NCBI GenBank assembly: GCA_026770705.1
Contig: JANJGN010000003.1
Span: 114,886,001 to 114,950,000, forward strand
Reading direction: 5' to 3'
Origin: Isurus oxyrinchus
Lineage: Eukaryota
DNA: 64,000 nucleotides
Position 1 is the stretch's first letter, and the number at the start of each line of letters is the position of its first letter. The notes below the pieces were generated by a model that made no database searches, was not told the DNA's origin, and saw nothing but the letters and a program-made list of their open reading frames with translations. The translations under genes and the position numbers were made by a program. Below, one piece after another: positions 9,300 to 58,247 of the stretch.

Positions 9300-9631
9300 G
9301 ACTGGACGTAATCCAGAGGCCCAGGCTAATGTTCTGGAGATGCGGGTTCAAATCCCACCCTGGCAGCTGATGGAATTTAAATTCAATTAATTAATAAAAA
9401 TCTGTAATTGGAAAGATAGACTCAGTAATGATTACCATGAAACTAGCATTGATTGTCATAAAAACCCATCTGGTTCACTGGTGCCCTTTAGAAAAGGAAA
9501 TCTGTTGTCCTTACTTGTTCTGCCCTTCACTTGACTCTGGATCCATAGCAATGTGGTTGACTCTTATTCCCCTTGACAGGAGTTAAGGGACAGGCAACAA
9601 ATGCTGGCCATCCCATTGAATAATAAAAAAA
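9300..9631 (+). mobile_element. tRNA-derived SINE sharing its head and 3' tail with the LINE at 26316-29149
   Basis: B-box GGTTCAAATCCC at 9345-9356, body matching 26400-26620, and tail ggcaacaaatgctggcc...gaataataaaaaaa. Confidence 0.75.
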
Positions 9632-20700: not shown

Positions 20701-23185
20701 TTTCTACATTTCCTCTGACCCGACCCTCCCCACCCCCACTACTTAGCTAATGCCATCTGAGCTGCCCCAGTGATATAATTTGCCAGGACACTGGTCCCAA
20801 CATGTTACAAATGAAGGCTGTTCCAATGGTACAGCTCCATCTTCCCCAGTACTGGTGCCAGTACCCCATGAATTGAAACCCATTTATCCTTTTTGAGCCA
20901 CACCTTCAAGTCTCTGATCATATTTACTCTATTCTGATTTTCTCAAAGCTAAGGCTGTAATCCGGAGATTATTACCTTCATGCTTTTGCTGTTTTAATTT
21001 AGCCCCTGGCTGCTCATGATCCCTCAGCAGAATCTCTTTCTTAATCCTACCTATGTTGGTATCATGGTACCCGTGTAGACCACGACAGCTGGATCCCTTT
21101 CCTCCCACTCCAAATTCCTCTCCAGACCCGAGAAGAGGTCCAAAACTCTTACACTGGGCAGGCAGCACAACCTTAGGGAGTCATGATCTAACTCCCTAAC
21201 AATACTGTCCCGTACTGTGGCTGGTACATTCATTTTTACTCCCCCAACTCAAATGGCCTCCTGTACCATGGTGTTGTTGTTTGTTTGCTAATTTTCTCTG
21301 CAACCCCTGCTCCTGTCCATACCGGCTGCAAGATCCCTGTGCTTGTTGGACAAGTGCAAAGGCTGAGTCTCCTCCAGTGCTACCTTCTGGATCCCCACAC
21401 CTGCCTTACTCTTAGTCACACCCTCCTGTCCCTGAGCATGGACCAAATTTGTTGTACTTAACCTAAGGGTTTGACTTCCTGTTGGAGCAAAGAATCCAGC
21501 TAATTTGCTCTTTCCCTGATACAGAAAAGTCAAATAAGAATAAAAACAGATGAATCACCTGGCATTGACTTTGACACAGAAATGACAAAGGCACACAATC
21601 CTCAGTCAACCCTCAGTAGCAAATTCGTATACAATAGGAAGTGAGTGACTCTTGGGGTCCTCAACATTGAATCCGAATCCCATGAAGTCTCTTTGACATC
21701 AGATCAAACAAGGAAATCTCCTACTGATTACCACCTAACATCATCCCCCAAGTGATGAATCAGTACTCCTCCATGTTGAACATCACTTGGAAGATGCACT
21801 GAGGGTAACAAGGGTACAGAATGGCTGAGGGGTTGCGAATGAGTGTGTCAGCCCAACTGCTGACCAAGCTAGCCCAGTACTGAAGGACATATCTGTCAGA
21901 CTGGGCCTGCGGGAGGTGCTGAGACGACCAACAGTTGGGAAGAGACTACCTGACCTCATCCTTACTGATCCACTTGTCACAGATGCATCTGTTCATTTGA
22001 TATTGATATGGCCTCGTCCTTACGAAGGCGAAGTTCTGTCTTCACACCATCATGTTGTATTGCACTACCACTGCCAAATAGGATAGATTCGGAAAGGATC
22101 TGGCAGCTCAAAACTGAGTATTCTTGAGGCGCTGTGAACCATCATCAGTATCAGAATTGTATTCAGCCACAACCTGTAACCTCGTGGCCCAGCATTTCCC
22201 TCACGTAACCATTACTATCAAGCCAAGTGATCAACCCTGGTTCACTGAAGATTGTAGGAGAGTATGCTAGGAGCAGCACCAAGCATACCTAAAAATGAGG
22301 TATCAATCTGCTGAAGCTACAACATAGGACTACATGCAAACTAAATAGCAGAAGCAGCATACAACAGACAGAGCTGAATGATCTCACAGACAGCAGATCG
22401 GATCAAAGCTCTGCAGTTCTGTCACGTCCAGTCATAAATGGTGGTGGACAATAAAACAACTAACCACCGGAGGAGACTCACATCCCTGCCTTCAATAATG
22501 GGACAGCCCAGTACATCAGCGTAAAATACAAGGCTGAAGAACTTGCAGCCGTCTTCGGCCAGAAGTGCAAAGTGGATGATCCATCTTGGCCACACCCTGA
22601 GGTCCTCAGCACCACAAAAGTTAGTCTTCTGATTCAGATCACTCCATGTGATATCAAGAAACAGCTGAAGGCACTGGATACAGTAAAGGCTATGGGCCCT
22701 GACAACATTGTGGCTGTAGACTGACGGCTTGTGCTCCAAACCTAGCCACGACCCTAACCAGCACTGCTACAACAGCTACAACACTGGCATCTACCAGCAA
22801 TATGGAAAATTGTCCAGATATGTCCTGTCCACAAAAGGTAAGACAAATCCAACCGGACAATTACTGCCCCATCGGCCTACTCTCAATCATCAGCAAGTGA
22901 TGCAAAGATGTTGTAAACAGTACTGTCAAGCAACACTTACTCACCAATAACTTGCTCATCCATGCTCATTTTGGGTTCAGTCAGGATGACTTAACTCCAG
23001 ACATCATTACAGCCTTGGTCCAAACATGGACAGAAGACCTGAATTCCAGAGGTGAGGTGAGAGTAGCTGTCCTTGACATCAAAGTAGCATTTGACCGAAT
23101 GTGATATCAAGGAACCTTAGCAAGAGTGAAGTCAGTGGGAATCTGAGGGGAAGGTCTCCATTGGTTGGTGTCTTCCCTAGCACCA
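17768..23185 (+). mobile_element. tRNA-headed LINE family copy (17768-18008 and 21521-23185), interrupted by a CR1
   Basis: The head matches 26408-26660, and the body from 21530 on is collinear with 26665-28240. Confidence 0.7.
18010..21520 (-). mobile_element. Near full-length decayed CR1 LINE (ORF1 SGNH esterase and ORF2)
   Basis: CR1 3' tail (ggagtaggctattcgaccc) at 18020, RT remnants, and esterase motif RLCCLPSVRV...PAVVVYTGT at about 21050-21200. Confidence 0.8.
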
Positions 23186-25183: not shown

Positions 25184-25474
25184 GTAACTCTTTCGAGTAC
25201 AAACATGTTTCTATCTGTTCCTATTCAGATGAAGTTACATTGTTTCATAGTTTGCCATGGTGAGATTTGAACTCTTGATCTTGGGGTTACAAGCCCAGTA
25301 CCATAACCACTTGGCTATTTAGGCCAAGCAAATGAATGTGTAACTCTTTCGAGTACAAACACGTTTCCATCTGTTCCTATTCAGATGAAGTTACATTGTT
25401 TCATAGTTTGCCATTTTGAGATTTGAACTCTTGATCTTGGGGTTACAAACCCAATACCATGACCACTAGGCTAT
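25184..25474 (-). repeat. Tandem dimer with 156-bp period, each unit containing a tRNA-like module
   Basis: Units start at 25184 and 25340 with about 8 mismatches in 135 nt. The - strand carries A-box TAGCCAAGTGG, loop CTTGTAA (TGT, Thr-like) and B-box GTTCAAATC. Confidence 0.85.
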
Positions 25475-26315
25475 GTACTAAAAATCAACATGATATTGAT
25501 CAACAATAAACTTATCAAGGTCAATTGTCTGTTGGGCAACCAACTAGCGGAGTATGTATTCATGCCAAAGAGATATTAAAGAGACATCAGCATCATTGAC
25601 AGGCTGACGAGCCACAAGGCATCCCAATGCTGCTTGCTGATTTGAAAGTTCCAAATGTCAGCCTCCATGGCCACCTGAAGGTAAATGCAGGGAATGGGAA
25701 GGGAGTCATGATCACAGTGTATGTGGTTTACACAATGGCAGTGACCAAGATTTTATTTTCCTGGGAGCTGGGGTGGCACTCCTGCTCTTCTCAGCCCCAC
25801 AAAAATAATTCCAAACTTACTTTAGCTGGGCCTCTGGCTTCATTGCCCTAGAACTGGTCAGAGTGTGCAATGCGTATGCTCTGACTAGATGAAACCTAAA
25901 ATGGCCATCCGTGGTACTCTGACCCAATCTGCATATTAAAAAGTCCTTGCCACCTGAGACAGGCAGGGGTTTGAGGGCCAGAAGTAGACACCTTCCAAAA
26001 TATCATCTGCCTGTTTGTAGGGACTGAATTTTCATGTTGTTGGTGGGAATCGGGAGACGCAAATAATCCTACTGTTGTAGTACACCTCCATCTCAACACT
26101 GCCGGCAGGCAGGATCTCCCCTAATTGGCCTGGAAACTGGCCTGCCACTGAAGGAAATGGAGGCAGGCCATATCCAGAGCGAGCAGGTTAAAAGGCCCAC
26201 CTCAATTTCCAAAAAACCTCTGACCAGTGTTGCAAATGCAATCAGCAGCCCGTTTTTTTGCAGTTGAACCTTCTGACCACCTTAAACCCACCACCCCAAC
26301 CCCATCCTCACCCTT

Positions 26316-29149
26316 GGTGAGAGTTTGACATGGTGGTAATGTCACTGGACTAGTAATCCAGAGGCCCCGGCTATGACTCTAGGGAAATGGCTTCAAATCC
26401 CACCATGGCAGCTCGTGGAATTGAAATGCAATGAATTAATACATTCAATTAATTATTAAATCTATAATTGAAATCTGGTCTCAGTAATGCTGACCATAAA
26501 ACTATCGTTGATTGTTATAAAATCTATCTGGTTCGCTAATATCCTTTAGAGAAGGAAATCTGCTGTTCTTACCTGATCTGACCTACATGTGACTCCAGAC
26601 TCTTAATTACCCTCTGAAATGGCATAGTAAGCCACTTGATTGTACCAAACTGTTACTGAAAACTCAAAAAAGAATAAAACTGATTCGACTACCTGGCATT
26701 GACCCAGGCACTGGAAATGACAACAGCACACCCAGTCTTATCAACCCTGTGAAGTCCTCTTTAACATCTGGGGGCTTATGCCATTATTAGGAGAGCTGTC
26801 CCACTAGAGACTAGTCCAGTAACAACCTGACATTCTGTTAGGTATGATTTGGTGAGTATGGCGATATACCAGACAATCATCATCACTGGGTATGACCTGC
26901 CCCACCAGGACTGGGGTGGCAGGCGTCCACATTAAATGGGGGACTTCAATGTCCATCACTAAGAGTGGCTTGTTAGCACCACTATTAACACAGCTGGCTG
27001 AACCTACTACTCCTTGTCCTCACCAATCTACCTGTCACAGGTGCATCTATCTGTGACAGTATCGGTAGGAGTGACCACCCAACAGTCCTTATGGAGACTA
27101 AGTCCCACCTTCACACTGAGGATACCCTTGGTTTTGTTGTGTGGCCCTACCAATGGACTAAATGGGATAGGTTCAGAACAGATCCAGCAATTCAAAAATA
27201 GGCATCCATGAGGTGCTTTGGGCCATTAGCAGCAGCTGAATTGTATTCAGCCACAATCCGTAACCTCATGGCTCACATTGTCCATCACTTTAACATTACA
27301 ATCAAACCAAACCATTAACCCTGGTTCAATAAGTGTGTAGAACATGCCAGGAGTAGCGCCTAACAATGAACTTTTAATCTAGTGACGCTACAAAGCAGGG
27401 TTATCATGTCAAACAGTGGAAGCAGCCTGCGATAAGAGTAAGCGATCTCACAACCAATGGACCAGACCAAAGCTTTCTAGTCCAGTCCCATCCAGCCATG
27501 AATAATGGTTGAAAATTAACAACTAACCGGACAAGGAGGCTCCACTAATATCCTGATCCTCAAATTATGGTGGAGCCCAGCCTGTCAATGCAAAAGACAA
27601 GGTTGAAGCGTTTGCAACAGTCTTCAGCCAAAAGTGCTGAGTCAATGATCCATCGCGACCAACAGCTGAGGTCCCCAGCATCACAGTCTTCAGCTAATTC
27701 ATTTCATTCCATGTGATATCAAAAAACAGCTAAAGGCACAGGATGCTCCAAAGGCTGTGGGCCCAGACAACACCCAGCAGTTGTACTGAAGACTTGTGCT
27801 CCAGAACTAGTCGCTCGCCTAGCCAAGCTGTTCCAGGAACAGTGACAACACTGGCATCTACCCGACAATGTGGAAATTTGCCCAGATATGTCCTGTCCAC
27901 AACAAAATAGGACAAATCCAATCCAACCAATTACTGCCCTATCAGTCCACTCTCGATCATCAACGAAGTGATGGAAGGTGTTGTTGACAGTGCTATCAAG
28001 CAACACTTACATAACAGTGACCTACTCACTGGTGCACACTTTGGGTTCTGCCAGGTCCACTCAGACCCTGACCTCATCGTAGCCTTGGTCCAAACAAGGA
28101 CAGAAGAGCTGAACTCAAGACAAGGTAAGAGTGACTGCCCTTGACATCTAGACAGCATTTAACCAAGCCAAGGAGCTATCGCAAAATTGAGGTCAATGGG
28201 AATCATGGAGAACGCTTTACTGATTGGAGTCATAGCCAGCACAAAGAAAGATGGTTGGGGTTGTTGAAAGACAATCGTCTCAGTCTCAGGACATTACTGC
28301 AAGAGTTTCAGTACCTTTCGCAACTCCTCAGATACTGAAGCAGTCCATATCCATTTGCAGCAAGACCTGGACAGTGTTCAGGCTTAGGCTGATAAGTGAC
28401 AAGTAACATTCACACCACAAAAGTGCCAGGCAATGACCATCTCCAACAAAAGAGGATCTAACCATTTCCCCTTGACATTCAAGGGCATTAGCATTGCTAT
28501 CTTCCCCCACTTTCAACTTTTGAGGAGTTACCTTTGACCAGAAACTGAACTGGACCAGCATGTAAATACTGTGGCTACAAAAGCAGGTCAAAGACTGGGA
28601 ATTCTGTGGCAAGTAACTCACCTCCTGTCTCCCCAAAGCCTATCCACCATCCATAAGGCACAAGTCACGATTGTGATGGAATACACCCCACTTGCTTAGA
28701 AGAACGCCGTTCAAACAACACTCAGGAAGTTCAGCATCATCCAGGACATCAGCCTTGATTGGCACTCCCTTCACCACCATTGCACAGTGGTAACAGTGAA
28801 CACCATATACAAGAGGCACTGCAGCATCACACTAAGGCTCTCCTCCTTCCAAGCTTGTGCCTTCTCTCACCTAGAAGGACGAGGACAGCAGACGCTTGGG
28901 AACACCACCACCTCTGTAAATTCCCCTTCAAGCTACACACTATCCTGACTTGGAACTATAATGCCAATTCTTCACTGTTGCTGGATCAAAATCCTGGCAC
29001 TCCCTTCGAACAGCACTGTTAGTGTACCTGCACCAGATTGAATGCAGTGGTTTAAAAAGGTGGCTCACTGCCATCACTCCCAGGGAAATTGGTAATTGGA
29101 AACAAATTCCTGGGCCAGTGACGCCTACAGCCTATGAAAGAAATAAAAA
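26316..29149 (+). mobile_element. Decayed CR1/L2-group LINE with a tRNA-derived 5' head and apparently a single EN-RT ORF
   Basis: Anticodon arm CTGGA-CTAGTAA-TCCAG at 26345-26361 and a B-box near 26390. Endonuclease motifs NIWGL and MGDFNVHH; RT motifs LKTCAPEL, NYCPISPLS and FGFCQ; A-rich 3' end. Confidence 0.8.
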
Positions 29150-43436: not shown

Positions 43437-44188
43437 GGCCAGAATTTTTCCATTGGCAAGTTGGGGGCAGGGCCTGCTTGCCAACGCGAAAATGATGCTG
43501 GATGACATGGGGCGGTTGGGGGGGGTTGGTGTGGGGGGGTGGGGGGGGGGGTGTGGTTGGGGAACCCCTGATGTTATCCTGCCCCATTTAAAAATTCAGG
43601 AAGGCGGGCAGACAACAAAATCAGCTGTCAGTCCGCTGACCTGTCAATGGCCAATTGAGGCCATTGACAGGGTAGTTAACCCTGTTTCCCTGCGGGAAAA
43701 CCCAGTCCAGCCTAGTTTACAAACATATAAAATTGATCTGCAGCAAAAGATTAGCTGTCCACCATGATGGCTAGAACATCATAACCGAATACTCCCTCCC
43801 ACTGGCGGGATGAGGTTTCATGTCTGTTTTTAAAAAGTTTAATAAAGATTTAGTAATATTTACTAACATGTCCAATCTCGTGTGACATTGTCACATGAGG
43901 GGGACATTTTAATAATTTTTTTATTTTTCTATTTTCGATGTTTGTGAAGCTTTCACTGATCTCACAGAGACAGCACTTAGTCTCAGGGAGATGAGCGCTG
44001 TTTCGCGCGCGCGCACTTTGACAGTTGGGGAATATCCCCCTCTTCCCCCTCCCCCCCCACCCCGCACAGGAAGCACATAGCACTTCCCATCGGGCAGCCC
44101 ATCCACTCAAAATGGTGGCAGCGACTGGCTGTCCACCCACCGCTGAGCCGGTCGGGCCTGCCCGCCCATCAAGGGCAAAATTCTGCCC
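43437..44188. mobile_element. MITE with Harbinger-like TIRs
   Basis: Left GGCCAGAATTTT and right AAAATTCTGCCC form inverted termini around a non-coding interior. Confidence 0.65.
43689..43800 (+). repeat. 112-bp direct duplicate of 44655-44766
   Basis: cctgcgggaaaacccagtcc...ccgaa[t/c]actccctccc, with one mismatch between the copies. Confidence 0.92.
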
Positions 44189-45225
44189 CGGAGGCAGCCT
44201 CCCTGCAGCAGGCTGAGGGTTCACCGGAGCCAGAATCTCCATGCACTCCTGCCAAAGTCTGCATAAATAAAAGGCCACATTTGTGGCCAAAGCTGATCTA
44301 ACAGAGGGGTTTCCACTGTAGACTCCTTGGAGTGAGGGGCATCCCCTCTGCTCTGACGGATGTACTGACTTGTTCCCTCTTTTCCACTTCATTAACTTCC
44401 TTGTTGAGGTGCCCTTGCAGTCTTCAATCTGCAGTCAGTTTCCACCTCTCTTGGTGAGGCTGCTGAGGCTCCAGGACTACTGGCCTTCTAGGCCTGTGTG
44501 CAGCATGGACAGCCTGACTGCCATCCTTAATAGGATGGCAAGCGCAGAGGCAGCCAGTTAGGAGCCCACCTCTGGGGAGATTGCACCACTAGTCTTGCTG
44601 TTGGCAAGTGCAGGCTCAGGATCCCCATTTGGTCCTGACGACCAGGTCCTGATGCCTGCGGGAAAACCCAGTCCAGCCTAGTTTACAAACATATAAAATT
44701 GATCTGCAGCAAAAGATTAGCTGTCCACCATGATGGCTAGAACATCATAACCGAACACTCCCTCCCCTTCCCCGTCGATCATCACACAAATGCACGTGTC
44801 CACACAAATACGGACATACAAACTTCAGCAGCCACGTAATTTCTTGAAAGCAAGTGAAAAAACAAGGGCCAGTAATGGATGAAATATCTTGGAAAATTCT
44901 TCTCTGACCCCTTTAGGTGATCGGATCGCATGGACCAGTGTTATCTATAAAGACACTTACCTTCTATATGATGAGCTCTTTGCTCTCGTCAAGAACCAAT
45001 CCAGATCTCTCTAGTATTTGTTTTCTAGTTATATTTCAATTCCGAGAGTCTAAAAAAGCATTTTTTATTAAAAAAAAGCAAATATCAGTTTATTTTTCTT
45101 GCATGTAACTGTAATTTTGTAAAATTACTGAATTATTCATTGTACATCCTGAAAAATGATAAATTCTCGTTCCATCATTCTTAAAACTAACATTAACAGT
45201 TAATTTATTTTGTAATTTATTATAG

Positions 45226-51974: not shown

Positions 51975-52785
51975 GTAATCTGCTGCTTATTTTTTGTGTT
52001 TAAAATGAGAGATGAAGAGAGCATATTACTGAGTTTTATTGAGCAGAGATTAACATTTGATTGAACAATATTAGATACATTTTTAATGAACAGGAATATT
52101 CAATTTTATTACTTGATCGGTGAAAATTGAAGTTTACATTTGAGCTGGTGGATCAGGCTTATTTTTGGAATGAGGCAAATTATATTGATTATCCATTTCA
52201 TTAACAAATCCAAATCTGAAGAAAAACTACTTGTCCTCTACTCACTAACCAAAAGTATCATTAAATATGTATTAACACAGAATCTCCTTGATTCAGCTTG
52301 CGTTGAAATTTGTCATTTATGTCATCAATCGTACCAACAGCAACTTAAACTGAAGTTTTTCAGAAATCTCAAAACATGCACTAATGTAAAAACTGGTATG
52401 AAAGAACTTGAAATCAGCATTCAGAATTCAAACACAGAATATACATTGTATTCCTTTTTTTTTTGAAAAATATACTTTATTCATAAAGTATCTGGAAGAA
52501 TATTCCAAAACGTTTCAAAATCATCATAACAAAAGTACAATCAGATTCAACTTTTACACATGGATCACGAGATGCATCAATACAATCAATGAATATTACA
52601 ATCATTTCAATATGGTCATTACAGACAATGGTATTGGAGTTATCAACGTATATCATGTTGCAGTCTGAGGTGCTTCAATAGAATTATAATACAATTAGTA
52701 TTCAATGCATACATTAATTTTGAGCTGTACAGCCCGAGGGGCTCTCAACAGTTCCTAGCCCCTCGTGCGCTATGGCAGAAAGGTC

Positions 52786-55700
52786 TTAGACAGTGACCTT
52801 TCCCCACTGCATCTTTGTGGCGGCTGCCCCAAGCTTTAGTGTGTCCCTCAGCATGTAGCCCTGGACTTTGGAATGTGCCAGTCTGCAACAGTTGGTTGGG
52901 GACAACTGTTTGCTCTGGAAGACCAACAAGTTTCGGGCAGACCAAAGAGCGTCTTTCACCGAGTTGATGATTCTCCAGCTGCAATTGATGTTTGTCTAGG
53001 TATGTGTCCCGTAGAGCACAGAGTCCTCGACAGAAACCACTGCATCTCTCTCTAGACCTTCTTTGCAAAGGCACAATCCACAAGGAGGTGAACAACGGTC
53101 TCGTCTCCATCACAGCCACCTCGAGGGCAACGTGCAGAGCGGGTGAGACTCCTGGTGTGTTGAAAGGATCTGACAGGGAGGGCCTTTCTCACCACCAGCC
53201 AAGCTACATCTTGGTGCTTGTTGGAAAGTTCTGGCAATGAGGCATTCTACCAAATGAGTTTGACAGTCTGCTCGGGGAACCATCCCACAGGACCCACCCT
53301 CTCCTTTTCCTGTAGGGCCTCTAAGACGTTAGGTTCCGACCACTGCCTGATGGAGTTGTGGTCAAAGGTGTTTCTCTGCATAAATTTTTCCACGAGGGAC
53401 AGGTGTTACGGCATGGTCCAACTACTTGGAGCATTCCGCGGCAGCGTGGCCAGACCCATCCTTCGCAACTCCGGGGACAGGTAGAACCTCAGCATGTAGT
53501 GACATTTGGTGTTTGCGTACCGAGGGTCCACGCACAGCTTGATGCAGCCGCACACAAAGGTGGCCATCAGTATGAGGGCGATGTTGGGCATGTTTTTCCC
53601 CCCCTTATCTAGAGGCTTGTACATCGCGTCCCTGCGGACACGATCCATTTTCAACCTCCAGATAAAGCGAAAGATGGCTCGGGTGATCGCCATCGTGCAG
53701 GAGTCTGGAATGGACCAAACCTGTGCCATGTACAGCAACAGCGAGAGTGCCTCACACCTGATGACCAGGTTCTTACCCGCAATGGAGAGGGAGCGTCGCT
53801 CCCACATGCCTGGTTTTCTTTGCACCAAAGACACTCGCTCCTTCCAGTTTCTAATGCATGCCCCGGTCCCTCCAAACTATATCCCCAGCATCTTCAGGCC
53901 GTCAGCCCTGACGGTGAAGGGGACAAAGGATGGGTCTGCGCAATTCCCAAAGAACATGGCCTCACTCTTCCCACGATTTACCTTGGCTCCCGAGGCCAGT
54001 TCGAACTGGTCGCAGATGTGGATCAGTCTGCATACCGACAGCGGATCTGAGCAGAAGACGGTGACATCATCCACGTACAGGGAGACTTTGACCTGAGTGC
54101 CTCCACTGCCTGGGATTGTCACTCCTCTTATGCCCGGATCCTTCCTGATGGACTCTGCTAAGGGTTCTATGCAACATACAAACAGGACAGGGGAGAGAGG
54201 GCAGCCCTGCCTGACTCCAGATTTAATAGGAAAGCTATCTGATTCCCACCCATTGATTGAGGCGGTGCTACTGAAGTTAGTGTAGAGCAGTTGGATCCAA
54301 TTGCGAATTCCGTCCCCAAACCCCATTTTGGAGAGCACATCCACCATGTAGGTGTGCGATATTCTGTCAAAGGCCTTCTCCTGATCCAGGCTGATGAGGC
54401 AGGTGTCCACACCCCTGTCCAACACATAGGGAATCGTATCCCTGAGAAGTGTGAGGCTGTCAGAGGTCTTCCTGCCGGGCACAGTGGAGGTCTGGTCAGG
54501 GTGGATCACCAATTCTAGAGTGGACTTGACCCGATTGGCGATGACCTTGGACAGAATCTTATAGTCCACATTTAACAGTGAAATCGGTCACCAATTTCTA
54601 ATTTCCTCCCTTTCCCCCTTGTGCTTGTAGATGAGGATGATGATGCCTTTCCTCATGGATTCTGACATGCTGCCGGCCAGAAGCATGCTCTAGTACACTT
54701 CTAGCAGGTCTGGACCAATCCAGTCCCACAGAGCCGAATAGAACTCTGCCGGCAAGCCGTCACTTTCGTGAGTTTTACTCTTCTCGAAGGACTCAAGGGT
54801 CTTAGTCAGTTCGTCAGGAGTTAGCGGTTTGTCCAGGCCCTCCCGTGTACTGTCATCTAAGACCTCCATGATAGAGGACAGGAAGGACTGGGAGGCCTTG
54901 CTGTCTGTGGGCTTCACATCATACAATCCAGCATAAAAGGATTTGCTGATCCTCAAAATGACAGATTGCGATGACTTTACTGAGCCGTCTTCTTCCTTCA
55001 GGCTGCTGATCGCAGAGCTCTCTCTGTGTACCTTTTGGAAGAAGAAACGTGAGCACTTCTCATCCTGCTTCACAGAGCGGACTTTGGAATGGAAGATGAT
55101 CTTGGAGGCCTCCAAGGCAAAGAGCGAGGCTTGCTGGCTCTTCACCATTTGGAGTTCCTCCTTGACATCGACCCCCATCGACTGCAGCCGGAGCAGGTTC
55201 TGCGTGTTTTTCTGGAATCAGGACATTTCCCCCTGTTCCTTTTTAGCTTTCTGGGCGCCTTTGAGGATGAAAAACCTCTTGATGTTTCCCTTGATCGCTT
55301 CCAACCAGTGTGTCAGGGACTCAAAGAGGGGTTTCATGGTTCTCCAACCTTTGTAATCCCTCTTGAGCTCCTCAATGTTCTCAGGGGTCAGCAGTTGCAC
55401 GTTTAGCTTTCATGCTCCTCTGCCCACCCTCTGGTCTTCCAGTCAGCCAGTAGGAGGCAGTGGTCAGAGAAGAACACTGGCTTGACATCGGTGGATCTGC
55501 CTGTGAATGCACAGGACACAAATAGGAAGTCTATTCTGGAACGGATGGACCGGTCTGGCCATGACCAGGTGTATCTACGCTGCGCGCCGTCTGCAGGGTT
55601 GCTGAAGACATCGTGCAGCCTGGCATCCTTAACTGTTTCCATCAGGGATCTGGACGTAGCATCCAATCTGCTGTCGGCCCTGCCGGATCATCCAGCCACA

Positions 55701-56142
55701 TCGATGATGCAGTTGAAGTCACCGCCCAGAATGACCAGCCTGGAGGGCACCAGCAGGAGTGGGAGCTGCTGAAAGACCGCCCGCCGCTCGCCCTTTTGTG
55801 CCAGGGCGTGCACGTTAATTAACCGGAGTGGAGCATTCTTGTACATTACATCTGCTATGAGGAGGCACCCACCCACCACCTTCTTAACGTCAGAGTGGTG
55901 AAGTTGCCTCCCCGCAGCAGAATACCCAGGCTGGAGGAACGAGAGTCGTTTCCTCCTGACCAGATCGATGGCCCGTGGGACCACCATCGTGACCATTGCC
56001 TTTAGGGGCTGAGGTGCGGTATCACACACTCCTGCAGAAACAACAGGTCAGCTTTGACCTTGGCAAGGTAGTCCAAGGTCGCAATACATTGCGTAGTAGA
56101 TTTAATGCTACGCACATTTATGGATACAATCTTTACACCCAC
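52786..56142 (-). pseudogene. Tx1 ORF2 (AP-endonuclease, reverse transcriptase, C-terminal Cys/His domain), disrupted
   Basis: Endonuclease motifs SINVRS, LFLQE, GGDFN, RIDFLF, SDH. RT motifs LDQEKAFDR, QGCPLSP, YVDD. C-terminal CPRGGCDGDETVVHLLVDC. Several frameshifts and stops. Confidence 0.9.
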
Positions 56143-56152
56143 TTTAAAGCAT

Positions 56153-57666
56153 TTAGTCTCTTACCAAACCTGTTGTCTTTGAGAGTTCCAGACCTTTGGT
56201 CTGCTCCTGCATATCCATATTGTTCACAAATTGCCCCACTTTGGATGGGCTGAGGAAACTGTCCTGAACCACCCCATTGGAGATGTTCCGCTCAGGTGGC
56301 ATCTGGGGATTTGCACCAGGATCGAGATTCGAATTGTTCTCTGTTGGAGAAGACTCTCCGATCCTCTCCCCCTCTGGGGCGTTGCTGTTCCTGTCTTCCC
56401 GGAGCTGGGGTGCACTGAGTGCTTCACTGCTCCCAGATTCCTGGGGCTGGGATGTGCTGGCCTTTTCTGGTTGTGGGCAAAGTTGGGGTGCACTGGTCTC
56501 CTCGTTGTCTCCAGTGTACTGGAGCTTGGGTGTCTCATCCTCCAACTCCCTAGAGCTTTGCCGCTTCCTCTGTAGGTGCCGCCCTTCCCTTTCTTTCTCC
56601 AAAGAGCAGCTGCCCTTGTCATCTGTGTCAGATGGGAGACGCCTCTGGGAAGTGGCTTGGTCCCTTCTGAGCCTGTTCTTCCTTTTGACTCTCTTCACCA
56701 GCTGCCACTCCGCCTGCTGATTCTCCGCTGCTTCCTCCTCCATTGATTCGCTCTCCTGAGGAGTGGGAGGTTCACGGGGCAGTGCAGTTGATTGGCTGTT
56801 TGCTGTCTTAATCTTTTCCTCCACCTTGACTTTCTCTGTGCCCTCCTTTGTCCTGTTGTTCTCACTGGGGGCCTTGGTTGTTGGGGTTGCAAGTGTCCTT
56901 TGTAATAGTGACACGAAGCATTTCAACTGCTTCCCCCTCGTTGGCTTTAGCTGCTGCTGCATAAGTGAGGCAGCATTTGGGGCAGTTCCTGTAGAGGTGG
57001 CCTGCCTTGCCACACAGGTTGCACACTTAGTCTTTTGCAGTCCTTTGTCAGGTGTCCTTCCTGCTTGCTGTTCTTGCAGAGGATGGCACTCCAATTGGCC
57101 GCCACATGACCAGACTTGCCACATGAGCGACAAAGTTTGGGCTGCCCAGCGTAGACAAGGTAGCCACGGCTTCCCCTGATAGCGAATCTGGAAGGAGAGT
57201 GGAAGATGGCTCCCTTACCATCGGTCTTGAGCATGACCTTGACCTGGCGTTTGCTTGTCCAAATCCCGAAGGCGTCTCTAACCTCAGTGCAGCTCCCAAC
57301 TTTGTTGACGTACCTGGCGAGGAAGGTGAACACATCGGCGGCAGGTACCACACAGTCCCGTTGCAATGGCAGAGCAAAGAGCGACTCCACCGTCAGTATC
57401 TTCATCTCCTGCTGGCCTCTCTTCTCCTTGAACACCTTCAGGAACTTGACGCAAGCTGCCACACTCCTGAAAGTCACATTGAAAAATCTAGCACTGGGGA
57501 AGTCTTGCAGGGAGTAGATCTCCTCCGCTTCAAATCCACATGCCTTCAACAGGATCCACTTGATGAAGAAGGCCCGATCCATGGGTGCTCGTCCTTCGTT
57601 GTCCTTCACTGCCACCCGAACGGTGTTATGTACTCCATGGTATGGGGCTCGACTGGTTATAGCCAT
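56153..57666 (-). pseudogene. Tx1 ORF1 (gag-like, three CCHC zinc knuckles), frameshifted
   Basis: ATG at 57666 (MAITSRAPYHGVHNTVRVAVK...). Knuckles CRSCGKSGHVAANW, CKNSKQEGHLTKDC and a third in a shifted frame, then a long charged C-terminus ending at the stop at 56153. Confidence 0.85.
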
Positions 57667-57677
57667 CGCTTCACAAT

Positions 57678-57702
57678 TACACTTGATCTTAGCCAAAATG
57701 CC
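57678..57702 (-). other. U2 snRNA-derived 25-nt fragment (U2 nt 11-35) forming the 5' end of the Tx1 element
   Basis: The - strand reads GGCATTTTGGCTAAGATCAAGTGTA versus U2 GGCCUUUUGGCUAAGAUCAAGUGUA: 24/25 against the vertebrate U2 sequence recalled from memory. Confidence 0.9.
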
Positions 57703-58247
57703 TACACTGTATTCCTTCTCTTCATGCCCTTCTTTATTTAATGGATGTTAAACTAAAGGCTAAAGCTATAAAACTATCATTTATAGCCTTAAGCAAAGCA
57801 TATTTAAGAAAATCTAATTATGGAGGTTTTTCTTTTTTTAATATAAAATTCAGATACCATGAAAATTAATTCAAAGATGTAGAAAATATAATGCCAGTCT
57901 CAGCAAAAAAGAAAAATGACTATGAAGTACCAGAATCCTGTAGCACCTACAATTTTCTGTAACAATTTGCATCTGCTTAGAAGTTACATAAATGCAGCAA
58001 GATCACCTTCACTGGTATTCTGCATGAGGGCAGAGCAATTTGAATTAAGTGAAGTTTCAGTAGATGATACGCGATTACAATAAAAATGATTGAGATAGTT
58101 TATGCATATTGAGGTGCTGTGAAACAAGTGTAAGTCTTTTGATTTGTGAGTCTCTTCAGGAATTCCTGGCATGATTCAGCTCTTATGCAGTTGTTGCATT
58201 GTAAACTATGAGGCCATTACCTTTTTCTTTAAGTTGGTTTTAACTAT

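What the first reader, a model, noticed from the sequence alone, without database searches (positions are those of the whole stretch)
52442..57717. U2 snRNA-headed Tx1 (Keno-like) retrotransposon inserted outside a U2 gene
Seen: the element's first 25 nt (57702-57678, - strand) match U2 snRNA nt 11-35 at 24/25. This piece lies inside the 15-bp TSD, no U2 sequence follows the poly(A) tail, and only 11 nt separate the U2 piece from the ORF1 ATG. Known: Keno elements of the Tx1 clade target U2 genes near this position, and crocodilian SINEU elements have snRNA heads. Inference: the RNA that retrotransposed was a U2-ORF1-ORF2 chimera. Either a promoterless master copy in a U2 locus is driven by the snRNA promoter and spawns off-target copies, or the U2 head has become a fixed part of a formerly site-specific LINE that is now dispersed.
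Basis: partly seen in the sequence, partly recalled or inferred. Interest (0 to 1): 0.85.

Follow-up and report, generated by a model that had tools for sequence, protein, structure and literature searches.

The report
Shark LINE headed by U2 snRNA
This is a dead copy of a very abundant shark jumping gene whose first letters are a piece of the U2 spliceosomal RNA, a kind of element already described in crocodiles, so it is a new example rather than a new kind.

Summary
On the minus strand, 57702-52457 is a full-length but broken 5,246-nt LINE. It has a 15-bp target-site duplication (14/15), a poly(A) signal and an A-run. Its first 25 nt match U2 snRNA positions 11-35 at 24/25, and 11 nt later ORF1 starts. 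There is no U2 gene or U2 3' part anywhere in the window.

The U2 head is not a one-off. A basking-shark gene model (XP_078387188.1, ORF1 63% identical) reads in frame through an upstream stretch that translates as U2 nt 5-34 (9/10 residues). Its head ends at the same boundary but is followed by a different leader. This scan also noted U2-headed copies on other DNA of this genome (s1-866117, s1-868770; unchecked).

The family is very abundant in two organisms' DNA runs, thins out towards its 5' end, and its 3' flanks share no sequence. It is therefore dispersed, not U2-resident.

The head ends within 3 nt of the published Keno insertion site in U2, so descent from a U2-targeting LINE co-transcribed with its target is the best reading. 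I could not decide whether master copies still sit in U2 genes or the head is now fixed. RT phylogeny with Keno could not be run.

Kojima 2015 already reports U2- and U1-headed Tx1 LINEs in crocodilians, so this is a new member of a known kind.

The parts
57703..57717 (-). 5' copy of the target-site duplication (AAGGAATACAGTGTA)
   Evidence: Read. It agrees with the 3' copy at 14 of 15 positions.
57678..57702 (-). U2 snRNA-derived head, model positions 11-35, 24/25 identical to the Rfam U2 consensus
   Evidence: cmscan alignment. The 17-mer is unique in the window. It translates as GILAKIKC in frame with ORF1.
57667..57677 (-). 11-nt leader between the U2 head and the ORF1 ATG
   Evidence: Read. 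It is not conserved in the basking-shark relative P0278, which has CRGDT before its Met.
56153..57666 (-). ORF1, broken by one frame change near 57040. It has two ZCCHC3-type RNA-binding domains and a weak CCHC zinc-knuckle match below Pfam's cut-off.
   Evidence: Pfam PF23057 (3.5e-18), PF23058 (1.7e-18) and PF00098 (0.0041; 17.6 bits, cut-off 20.8). It is 63% identical over 225 aa to P0278. tblastn with P0002 needs two frames.
52786..56142 (-). ORF2: AP-type endonuclease, reverse transcriptase and a C-terminal part. It is broken by at least three frame changes and at least seven in-frame stops.
   Evidence: tblastn covers residues 2-1127 of the intact 1,130-aa relative P0270. RVT_1 scores 1.3e-31 on 53877-54569. 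The endonuclease piece aligns to P0270 residues 77-146 at E 1e-18. P0270 has Exo_endo_phos, RVT_1 and zf-RVT. The RT piece matches human L1 ORF2p at 1.1e-37 and R2 at 6.4e-12.
52465..52785 (-). 3' UTR with the AATAAA signal at 52481-52476
52457..52464 (-). Poly(A) tail: an A-run of 10 at 52464-52455, the last two letters shared with the TSD
52442..52456 (-). 3' copy of the target-site duplication (AAGGAATACAATGTA)
52434..52447 (-). U2-target-like motif of the pre-insertion site (AATGTATATTCTGT; the 5' TSD copy has G at the second letter). It resembles U2 positions 30-43 and is in register with the end of the head.
   Evidence: The pattern AGTGTANNNTCTGT with up to 1 mismatch hit 3 places, this one among them. 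Shuffles expect 1.24 hits per window on both strands, which is about 1e-5 per position.

Best explanation
This is a dead daughter copy of an abundant elasmobranch LINE. The LINE has an AP-type endonuclease and belongs to the L1/Tx1 supergroup. Its position relative to U2 is Keno-like. The RNA of this lineage begins with U2 snRNA nt 1-35, followed by a very short leader and then ORF1.

How the copy arose. A polyadenylated head-ORF1-ORF2 RNA was copied into unique AT-rich DNA by target-primed reverse transcription. This left a 15-bp TSD. The copy lost the first 10 nt of the head to 5' truncation.

Origin of the head. An ancestor sat at the Keno site of U2 genes (nt 35-38) and was transcribed together with the first 35 nt of U2. 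That is why the head stops at nt 35.

My lean (inferred, about 0.45). The RNA is still made from a few master copies inside U2 genes, starting at the U2 start site. This would keep the head U2-identical while the neighbouring leader drifts. Under this reading the thousands of dispersed daughters are promoterless.

What is shown: the anatomy, the U2 identity of the head, the same head in a diverged relative, and the dispersed 3' flanks. What is inferred: the start at U2 +1, the U2-resident masters, and the Keno ancestry. The core statement (head-bearing RNA, lineage feature) I put at about 0.85.
For: - The anatomy and the 24/25 U2 match are shown.
- The head is a lineage feature. Basking-shark XP_078387188.1 (P0278) has ORF1 141/225 identical to the window's (E 1e-95). 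Its residues 31-40, LLGLLANIKC, equal the translation of Rfam U2 consensus nt 5-34 at 9 of 10. Five residues (CRGDT) separate them from Met46.
- The window head reads GILAKIKC in the same U2 frame.
- In both, U2 likeness stops at nt 34/35. The leaders differ: 4 codons against 5, and the distance to the conserved ORF1 part is 6 aa against 17 aa.
- The published Keno 3' flank starts TCTGTTC, '37 nucleotides downstream' (PMC6136364 passages). Downstream U2 starts at nt 39 for Utopia, whose site is stated to be the same as Keno's (PMC4640811 section 6).
- The family is abundant and dispersed. 27,715 contig pieces were laid in X1 and 47,469 in X3. Depth falls from about 3-6x10^5 near the 3' end to 8,214 (X1) and 20,182 (X3) in the 5' bin, against 29 and 41 in the unique flank.
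- 78 (X1) and 93 (X3) contigs run out of the 3' end with a consensus agreement of only 0.33.
- Unchecked notes report U2-headed copies elsewhere in this genome, and U1- and tRNA-headed Tx1 LINEs.
- Precedent: Tx1-11_Crp has a U2 head, and its group clusters with Keno (PMC4494074 sections 15 and 16).
Against: - No copy inside a U2 gene was seen. No U2 gene is in the window.
- The 5' ends of other copies in this genome could not be read. None of the 24 loose-end rows shown lies at 57702, and 5,177 rows were not shown.
- One possible-RNA contig (X17 record 24) stops matching at 57674 and runs on for about 500 letters. At least one relative may therefore have a different upstream sequence.
- P0278's gene model extends 29 codons upstream of the U2 part. 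If that model is RNA-based, this argues against a start at U2 +1 for that copy.
- A family this abundant cannot have a strictly U2-specific endonuclease. The flank consensus next to the poly(A) is A/T-rich, which looks L1-like.
- As I recall (no call), snRNA promoters are poor at making long polyadenylated RNAs.
- Cross-species support rests on one protein.
Confidence: 0.5

Rival explanations
1. Fixed head. The lineage left U2 genes long ago. U2 nt 1-35 is now simply the start of its 5' UTR and is inherited copy to copy. Transcription comes from an internal promoter in the leader or ORF1 region, or from chance upstream promoters.
For: - Copy number is very high, and the 3' flanks are unrelated and A/T-rich.
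- This copy and the ones noted elsewhere lie outside U2 genes.
- Crocodilian Tx1-11_Crp keeps a U2 head while targeting a Mariner transposon (PMC4494074 section 16).
- P0278's model starts upstream of the head.
Against: - The head stays near-identical to U2 (24/25 nt here, 9/10 residues in P0278). Meanwhile the adjoining leader and ORF1 N-terminus differ completely between the two subfamilies. A neutral UTR should drift along with them, unless the head is under selection.
- The Kojima 2015 introduction states that no internal promoter of snRNA genes has been reported.
- The 5' 103 nt show no stable structure (z +2.05).
Confidence: 0.35
2. Template switch. During reverse transcription the enzyme jumped from the 5' end of an ordinary LINE RNA onto a U2 snRNA molecule, as in L1-U6 chimeras. 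Kojima proposed the same for SINEU heads. It could have happened once in this copy or repeatedly.
For: Kojima 2015 argues for recurrent 5' addition of U1/U2 pieces by template switch in SINEU (PMC4494074 sections 17 and 19). snRNA-LINE chimeras are known in mammals and are cited there.
Against: - A jump would give varying U2 3' boundaries. Here the boundary is nt 34/35 in two subfamilies that are only 63% identical in ORF1. That boundary coincides with the Keno target site.
- The LINE part is full length up to 11 nt before its ATG.
- The head recurs in other copies, by unchecked notes.
Confidence: 0.08
3. The U2 likeness is a chance match or an assembly artefact, and the element is an ordinary LINE copy.
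For: The whole-model cmscan score is below the gathering score (16.1 against 46 bits).
Against: - The match is 24/25 ungapped and sits exactly at the first base after the TSD.
- The same peptide-level U2 signal appears in another species.
- The window has no N.
Confidence: 0.01

Closest known systems
Tx1-11_Crp and other snRNA-headed 'Tx1-Mar' LINEs of crocodilians (Kojima 2015, PMC4494074)
   Same: Both are autonomous Tx1-type LINEs whose 5' end is a U2-derived (or U1-derived) sequence. That group clusters with Keno in the paper's RT tree. Their copies lie outside U2 genes.
   Different: Tx1-Mar families prefer one Mariner transposon as target. Here the 5' flank is single-copy and the 3' flanks of 78 and 93 contigs share nothing. 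The hosts differ: crocodilians against elasmobranchs. The exact U2 coordinates of the crocodilian heads are in Fig. 1B and the supplements, which I could not see. Kojima explains those heads by template switch; here the nt-35 boundary points to co-transcription.
Keno (U2 snRNA gene-specific Tx1-clade LINEs of fish, frogs, lancelet and hydra)
   Same: Both have an AP-endonuclease LINE architecture. The U2 piece ends within 3 nt of the published Keno insertion point. The pre-insertion site carries a U2-target-like motif.
   Different: Keno copies sit inside U2 genes, with U2 sequence after the poly(A). This copy and the bulk of its family do not. RT relatedness was not tested.
SINEU (snRNA-headed SINEs of crocodilians)
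   Same: Both have a U2- or U1-derived head on a retroposon mobilised by Tx1 machinery. A gag-only, internally deleted derivative of the shark family may be the local counterpart (joint 52740->56138 in X15; note s1-868770).
   Different: SINEU elements are short and non-coding. This element is a 5.2-kb two-ORF LINE.
R2/R1-type co-transcription of site-specific LINEs with their target gene
   Same: A promoterless element with a minimal 5' UTR relies on the target gene's promoter. Target sequence at the RNA's 5' end is the expected trace (discussed in PMC4494074 section 20).
   Different: R2 removes the upstream rRNA with a ribozyme (recalled, no call) and stays in its target. Here the upstream piece is kept and the daughters are dispersed.
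L1-U6 and other snRNA/LINE chimeric retrocopies made by template switching
   Same: Both have an snRNA sequence joined to the 5' side of LINE sequence inside one TSD.
   Different: As I recall (no call), those chimeras are one-off, with random junctions and truncated LINE parts. Here the junction is fixed across subfamilies and the LINE part is complete.

Membership tests
Tx1 clade of non-LTR retrotransposons | RT groups with Tx1 references in a phylogeny (RTclass1 or Repbase set) | not testable with these tools
   No named Tx1 or Keno reference could be obtained. Of the 120 listed RT-piece hits (432 at E<=1e-10), none carries a Tx1 or Keno name. The Atlas gives only RVT_1.
Tx1 clade of non-LTR retrotransposons | AP-type endonuclease at the N-terminus of ORF2, then RT, then a zinc-binding C-terminal domain (L1/Tx1 supergroup architecture) | tested here: met
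   The window covers residues 2-1127 of P0270. P0270 has Exo_endo_phos, RVT_1 and zf-RVT. The endonuclease piece aligns at E 1e-18. The RT piece matches human L1 ORF2p at 1.1e-37 against 6.4e-12 for R2. This does not separate Tx1 from L1.
Tx1 clade of non-LTR retrotransposons | ORF1 with RNA-binding domains plus CCHC zinc knuckles | tested here: met
   PF23057 (3.5e-18) and PF23058 (1.7e-18) are clear matches. PF00098 (0.0041; 17.6 bits against a cut-off of 20.8) is a weak match below Pfam's cut-off, so the zinc-knuckle part is only suggested. That this architecture is typical of Tx1 is recalled, not tested.
Keno (U2-specific Tx1 LINE) | Copies inserted in U2 snRNA genes, with U2 from about nt 38/39 after the poly(A) | tested here: not met
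   There is no U2 after the poly(A) and no U2 gene in 64 kb. The 3' flanks of 78 and 93 contigs of the family share no consensus (agreement 0.33).
Keno (U2-specific Tx1 LINE) | 5' side joined to U2 at the Keno site | tested here: met
   The head ends at U2 nt 35 in the window and at nt 34/35 in P0278. The published 3' junction lies at nt 37-39. The published 5' junction of Keno itself was not seen.
snRNA-headed Tx1 LINEs (Tx1-Mar type, Kojima 2015) | A U1- or U2-derived sequence forms the 5' terminus of an autonomous Tx1 LINE family | tested here: met
   At family level this rests on one cross-species relative plus unchecked notes.
snRNA-headed Tx1 LINEs (Tx1-Mar type, Kojima 2015) | Preference for Mariner-N4_AMi-type targets | tested here: not met
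   The 5' flank has single-copy depth (29 and 41, against thousands on the element), and the 3' flanks are unrelated.
Template-switch snRNA/LINE chimera | One-off event with a variable junction and a truncated LINE part | tested here: not met
   The U2 boundary is the same in two diverged subfamilies and the LINE part is full length.

The most novel reading that the evidence does not exclude
An elasmobranch LINE lineage is caught between site-specific and dispersed life. A few master copies in U2 gene arrays would use the snRNA promoter to make a capped, polyadenylated 5-kb mRNA that starts at U2 +1. The integration machinery would have relaxed its first nick to A/T-rich DNA, yet would still place the second-strand nick at a U2-target-like motif (AGTGTA NNN TCTGT). 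That motif is seen here in register with the end of the head. The result would be thousands of promoterless daughters, plus gag-only derivatives. The same genome may hold parallel U1- and tRNA-headed Tx1 lineages.
Probability: 0.2. Interest if true: 0.65.

Novelty: new member of a known kind. Interest (0 to 1): 0.42.

Why it matters
How site-specific LINEs lose or change their target, and how promoterless LINEs are transcribed, are open questions.

A very abundant family that still carries the first 35 nt of its former target gives a built-in marker. Head start points show where transcription began. Head divergence against body divergence shows whether the masters still sit in U2 genes. Junction logos would show which nick keeps its specificity.

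It also extends snRNA-headed LINEs from crocodilians to sharks. This suggests the trait is a general consequence of the Tx1/Keno lifestyle rather than a crocodilian oddity.

For genome annotation, such heads can be mistaken for U2 pseudogenes. They can also be pulled into gene models, as in the basking-shark model XP_078387188.1.

Tried and rejected
Reading the 5' ends of other copies:
- Read laying was given the whole 5,601-nt stretch. Its truncated tables (24 loose-end rows shown, 5,177 not shown; 32 pieces shown, 79,581 not shown) show nothing at 57702. The tool has one call, so the question stayed open.
No DNA could be fetched around the shark proteins or the intact Logan ORF2 relatives.
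- A metagenome scan with ORF1 gave 84 pattern matches, none confirmed by tblastn.
- Exact scans with the head-leader junction found nothing in metagenome contigs or viral contigs.
- The search of earlier findings by sequence was blank.

Clade naming:
- None of the 120 listed RT-piece hits (432 at E<=1e-10) has a Tx1 or Keno name.
- The representative search gave 57,929 hits, 150 listed, without names.
- 10 of 10 looked-up long relatives are unnamed Logan or ENA proteins.
- The Atlas gave only RVT_1.
- The ZCCHC3/Tx1 paper search gave nothing on ORF1 origin (listing only).

Structure and promoter:
- The 5' 103 nt fold worse than shuffles (z +2.05).
- The promoter scan is for bacterial promoters and says nothing here.

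Target as an old U2 pseudogene: rejected. There is no U2 hit in the 3' flank, and likeness to U2 is confined to about 22 nt around the junction.

The leader's antisense match to the U2 5' end (note s1-898466). The window letters are there, but the match rests on my recall of vertebrate U2. P0278's leader (CRGDT-M) cannot encode it. I therefore treat it as chance or subfamily-specific.

Literature:
- Searches for a shark U2-headed LINE (26 papers hold at least 3 of 4 terms, 15 listed; 20 listed) showed none.
- Kojima & Fujiwara 2004 was not seen. It is cited only through PMC4494074, PMC4640811 and PMC6136364.
- I did not ask for the supplements or figures of PMC4494074 (Fig. 1B, S1-S6). They may give the exact U2 coordinates of the crocodilian heads.


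Full report
**What is there**

On the minus strand, a 5,246-nt LINE runs from 57702 to 57457's opposite end at 52457. Its parts are as follows.
- It is bracketed by AAGGAATACAGTGTA (57717-57703) and AAGGAATACAATGTA (52456-52442), a 15-bp target-site duplication with one mismatch.
- It ends in AATAAA (52481-52476) followed by a run of 10 A (52464-52455).
- Its first 25 nt (57702-57678) align to positions 11-35 of the Rfam U2 model, with 24 of 25 letters equal to the consensus.
- Eleven nt later (57666) ORF1 starts.
- The head, the leader and ORF1 are in one frame, reading GILAKIKC-NCEA-M.

The whole-model score is low (16.1 bits, E 0.48) because only a 25-nt piece is present. The ungapped match at the very first base after the TSD is not chance. 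The head's 17-mer is unique in the window, and shuffles expect 0.20 hits even with 3 mismatches allowed.

No Rfam family reaches its gathering score in the 64 kb. The 3' flank has no U2 hit. The published Keno 3' target has 0 matches at up to 3 mismatches. The one correction is that the TSD agrees at 14/15.

**What kind of element**

- ORF1 has two ZCCHC3-type RNA-binding domains (PF23057 at 3.5e-18, PF23058 at 1.7e-18). A CCHC knuckle matches only weakly, below Pfam's cut-off (PF00098, 0.0041; 17.6 bits against 20.8).
- ORF2 covers residues 2-1127 of an intact 1,130-aa relative, P0270. P0270 has Exo_endo_phos, RVT_1 and zf-RVT.
- The window's endonuclease piece aligns to P0270 residues 77-146 (E 1e-18).
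- The RT piece hits RVT_1 (1.3e-31). It matches human L1 ORF2p far better than R2 proteins (1.1e-37 against 6.4e-12).

So this is an AP-endonuclease LINE of the L1/Tx1 supergroup. The copy is dead. ORF1 needs one frame change, and ORF2 needs at least three frame changes and has at least seven in-frame stops.

I could not place the RT with Tx1 or Keno. No named reference could be obtained.

The relatives found with names are mostly from cartilaginous fishes:
- ORF1: Cetorhinus maximus, Mobula, Heptranchias perlo and Pristiophorus japonicus.
- RT: 72% identical in Rhincodon typus. A few weaker named RT hits come from other vertebrates.

**Is the head a one-off?**

No, as far as I could test. The third protein search found basking-shark XP_078387188.1 (P0278, 471 aa). 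Its ORF1 part is 141/225 identical to the window's (E 1e-95).

Its gene model runs in frame through the upstream region. Residues 31-40 read LLGLLANIKC. The Rfam U2 consensus printed, read from position 5 to 34, translates to LLGLLAKIKC, which is 9 of 10 identical. The residue before (S30) is compatible with U2 nt 2-4 as I recall vertebrate U2 (no call).

After C40 come CRGDT and then Met46. U2 likeness therefore stops at nt 34/35, as in the window. The leader is different, and the distance to the conserved ORF1 part is 17 aa instead of 6.

Three things follow:
- The head belongs to the lineage, not to this insertion.
- The full head starts at or very near U2 nt 1, so the window copy is 5'-truncated by about 10 nt.
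- The head is much better kept than the sequence next to it.

This scan also noted U2-headed copies on other DNA of the same genome: s1-866117, a 5,365-letter Keno-like element outside a U2 gene, and s1-868770, a 1,963-letter gag-only element. I could not check them. One joint in run X15 skips 52740->56138 with 39 other letters between. That would give a gag-plus-tail element of about 1.9 kb, which fits the second note.

**The family in the genome**

Contigs of four public runs from two coded organisms were laid on 52300-57900 at 80% likeness or more.

| Run | Pieces laid | Depth, high 3'-side bin | Depth, 5' bin (57536-57722) | Depth, unique 5' flank |
|---|---|---|---|---|
| X1 (DNA?) | 27,715 | about 3.4x10^5 | 8,214 | 29 |
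| X3 (DNA?) | 47,469 | up to 6.5x10^5 | 20,182 | 41 |
| X15 (RNA? guess) | 1,748 | not compared | 434 | 0 |
| X17 (RNA? guess) | 1,164 | not compared | 28 | 0 |

In X1, 3,107 pieces were at least 99% alike, 7,328 were 95-99%, 11,578 were 90-95% and 5,702 were below 90%. The tool warns that summed depth is not a copy number. The shape is nonetheless that of a very abundant, mostly 5'-truncated LINE family.

At the 3' end, 78 (X1) and 93 (X3) contigs run on into letters with a consensus agreement of only 0.33. Those letters are A/T-rich next to the A-run. The copies therefore have unrelated flanks. They are not followed by U2 and do not sit in one repeated target. The family is dispersed.

The tables were cut (5,177 loose-end rows and 79,581 pieces not shown), and no shown row lies at the 5' junction. 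The 5' ends of the other copies therefore remain unread.

One possible-RNA contig (X17 record 24, 803 letters) stops matching at 57674 and continues for about 500 letters. It may be a relative with another leader, like P0278, or a copy without the head. Whether X15 and X17 are really RNA is a guess of the tool. Their zero depth on the unique flank fits either RNA or very thin DNA.

**Why U2 nt 35**

Keno is the Tx1-clade LINE specific for U2 genes. Its 3' flank is TCTGTTCTTATCAGTTTAAT, '37 nucleotides downstream' of the U2 start (PMC6136364, passages). The Utopia paper states that Utopia and Keno share the same site, with downstream U2 starting at nt 39 (PMC4640811, section 6).

A copy sitting there and transcribed from the U2 start would give an RNA with U2 nt 1 to about 35-38, then the element. 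That is exactly the head seen. The same boundary in two subfamilies argues against template switching onto free U2 snRNA, which should give varying boundaries.

**An unexplained detail**

The pre-insertion site, rebuilt from the TSD and the 3' flank, reads ...ACAGTGTA|TATTCTGT... The TSD's 3' edge (the second-strand nick) is in register with U2 35|36. The motif AGTGTA NNN TCTGT equals U2 positions 30-35 and 39-43 of the consensus.

With up to one mismatch this motif is expected 1.24 times per window on both strands, which is about 1e-5 per position. It is post hoc and rests on one copy. It may mean that the second nick still reads the U2 site while the first nick, 15 bp upstream and in A/T-rich context, does not.

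**Mechanism and rivals**

Shown: the anatomy, the U2 identity of the head, the head in a diverged relative, and the dispersed family.

Inferred: the copied RNA was a polyadenylated U2(1-35)-ORF1-ORF2 transcript, and the lineage descends from a U2-resident, co-transcribed LINE.

| Reading | My weight | Main argument |
|---|---|---|
| Masters still in U2 genes | about 0.45 | The head stays U2-identical while its neighbour drifts. Tandem U2 arrays could keep such masters homogenised (the arrays are recalled, no call). |
| Fixed head with another source of transcription | about 0.35 | Favoured by the sheer abundance, the A/T-rich first-nick sites and the crocodilian precedent. |
| Template switch | about 0.08 | Varying boundaries expected, not seen. 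|
| Chance or artefact | about 0.01 | Contradicted. |

**What is known**

Kojima 2015 is PMC4494074. I read the abstract, found passages, and sections 11, 15, 16, 17, 20 and 21. It reports that crocodilian Tx1-Mar families, which cluster with Keno, include Tx1-11_Crp with a U2 head, and Tx1-2_Crp, Tx1-2B_Crp and Tx1-4_AMi with U1 heads. It discusses dependence on flanking promoters.

The idea of a U2-headed dispersed Tx1 LINE is therefore in print. This is a new member in a new host group, with two differences:
- It shows no repeated target.
- Its head boundary points to co-transcription rather than template switch.

Two paper searches for a shark case listed none.

Other notes of this scan describe more Tx1 LINEs with small-RNA heads in the same genome (mostly unchecked):
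- U1-headed ones: s1-900672 and s1-900671.
- One splitting a U1 gene: s1-863549.
- tRNA-Thr-headed ones: s1-871382.

These suggest that small-RNA heads are a general habit of Tx1 LINEs in this shark.

**Verdict**

This is a new member of a known kind, of moderate interest. The decisive genome-wide table of 5' junctions and a search of U2 genes for master copies could not be run here.

Noticed in passing
window 52434-52447 (-) together with 57703-57708 (-): The rebuilt pre-insertion site carries AGTGTA NNN TCTGT, like U2 positions 30-43, in register with the end of the U2 head and the TSD's 3' edge. The chance expectation is about 1e-5 per position. It may mark retained second-strand specificity, but it rests on one copy.
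   Followed up: partly
window 57664-57671 (-): Note s1-898466 says the leader plus the start codon is antisense to the U2 5' end. The letters are there. However, the basking-shark relative's leader (CRGDT-M) cannot encode it, so it is not a conserved feature.
   Followed up: partly
window 52740 and 56138 (joint in run X15): One contig joins the end of ORF1 to the 3' UTR. It skips 3,397 nt of ORF2, with 39 other letters in between. This would be a gag-only, non-autonomous derivative of about 1.9 kb, which fits note s1-868770. DNA run X3 shows other large internal deletions (53308->57156 and 53616->57517).
   Followed up: partly
P0278 (XP_078387188.1, Cetorhinus maximus): A RefSeq gene model has pulled a U2-derived head and 29 upstream codons into the coding sequence of a LINE ORF1. 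This is probably an annotation artefact of a decayed retroelement copy.
   Followed up: partly
window 9308-9396 and 26353-26441: Two copies (81% alike) of a tRNA-like SINE head. They contain GGTTCAAATCCCAC-type B-box sequence, typical of shark SINEs as I recall (family D9).
   Followed up: no
window 22076-23050 and 27160-28120: Three collinear repeat families (D2, D5, D11; 75-84% alike) lie at a constant spacing of about 5,070 nt. This points to two diverged copies of another long repeat, or a local duplication.
   Followed up: no
window 25184-25477: A 138-nt unit is repeated in tandem at a spacing of 156 nt, 93% alike (family D3).
   Followed up: no
window 43689-43800 and 44655-44766: A 112-nt direct repeat, 99% alike and 966 nt apart. 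It could be the ends of a young insertion such as an LTR or a duplication (family D6).
   Followed up: no
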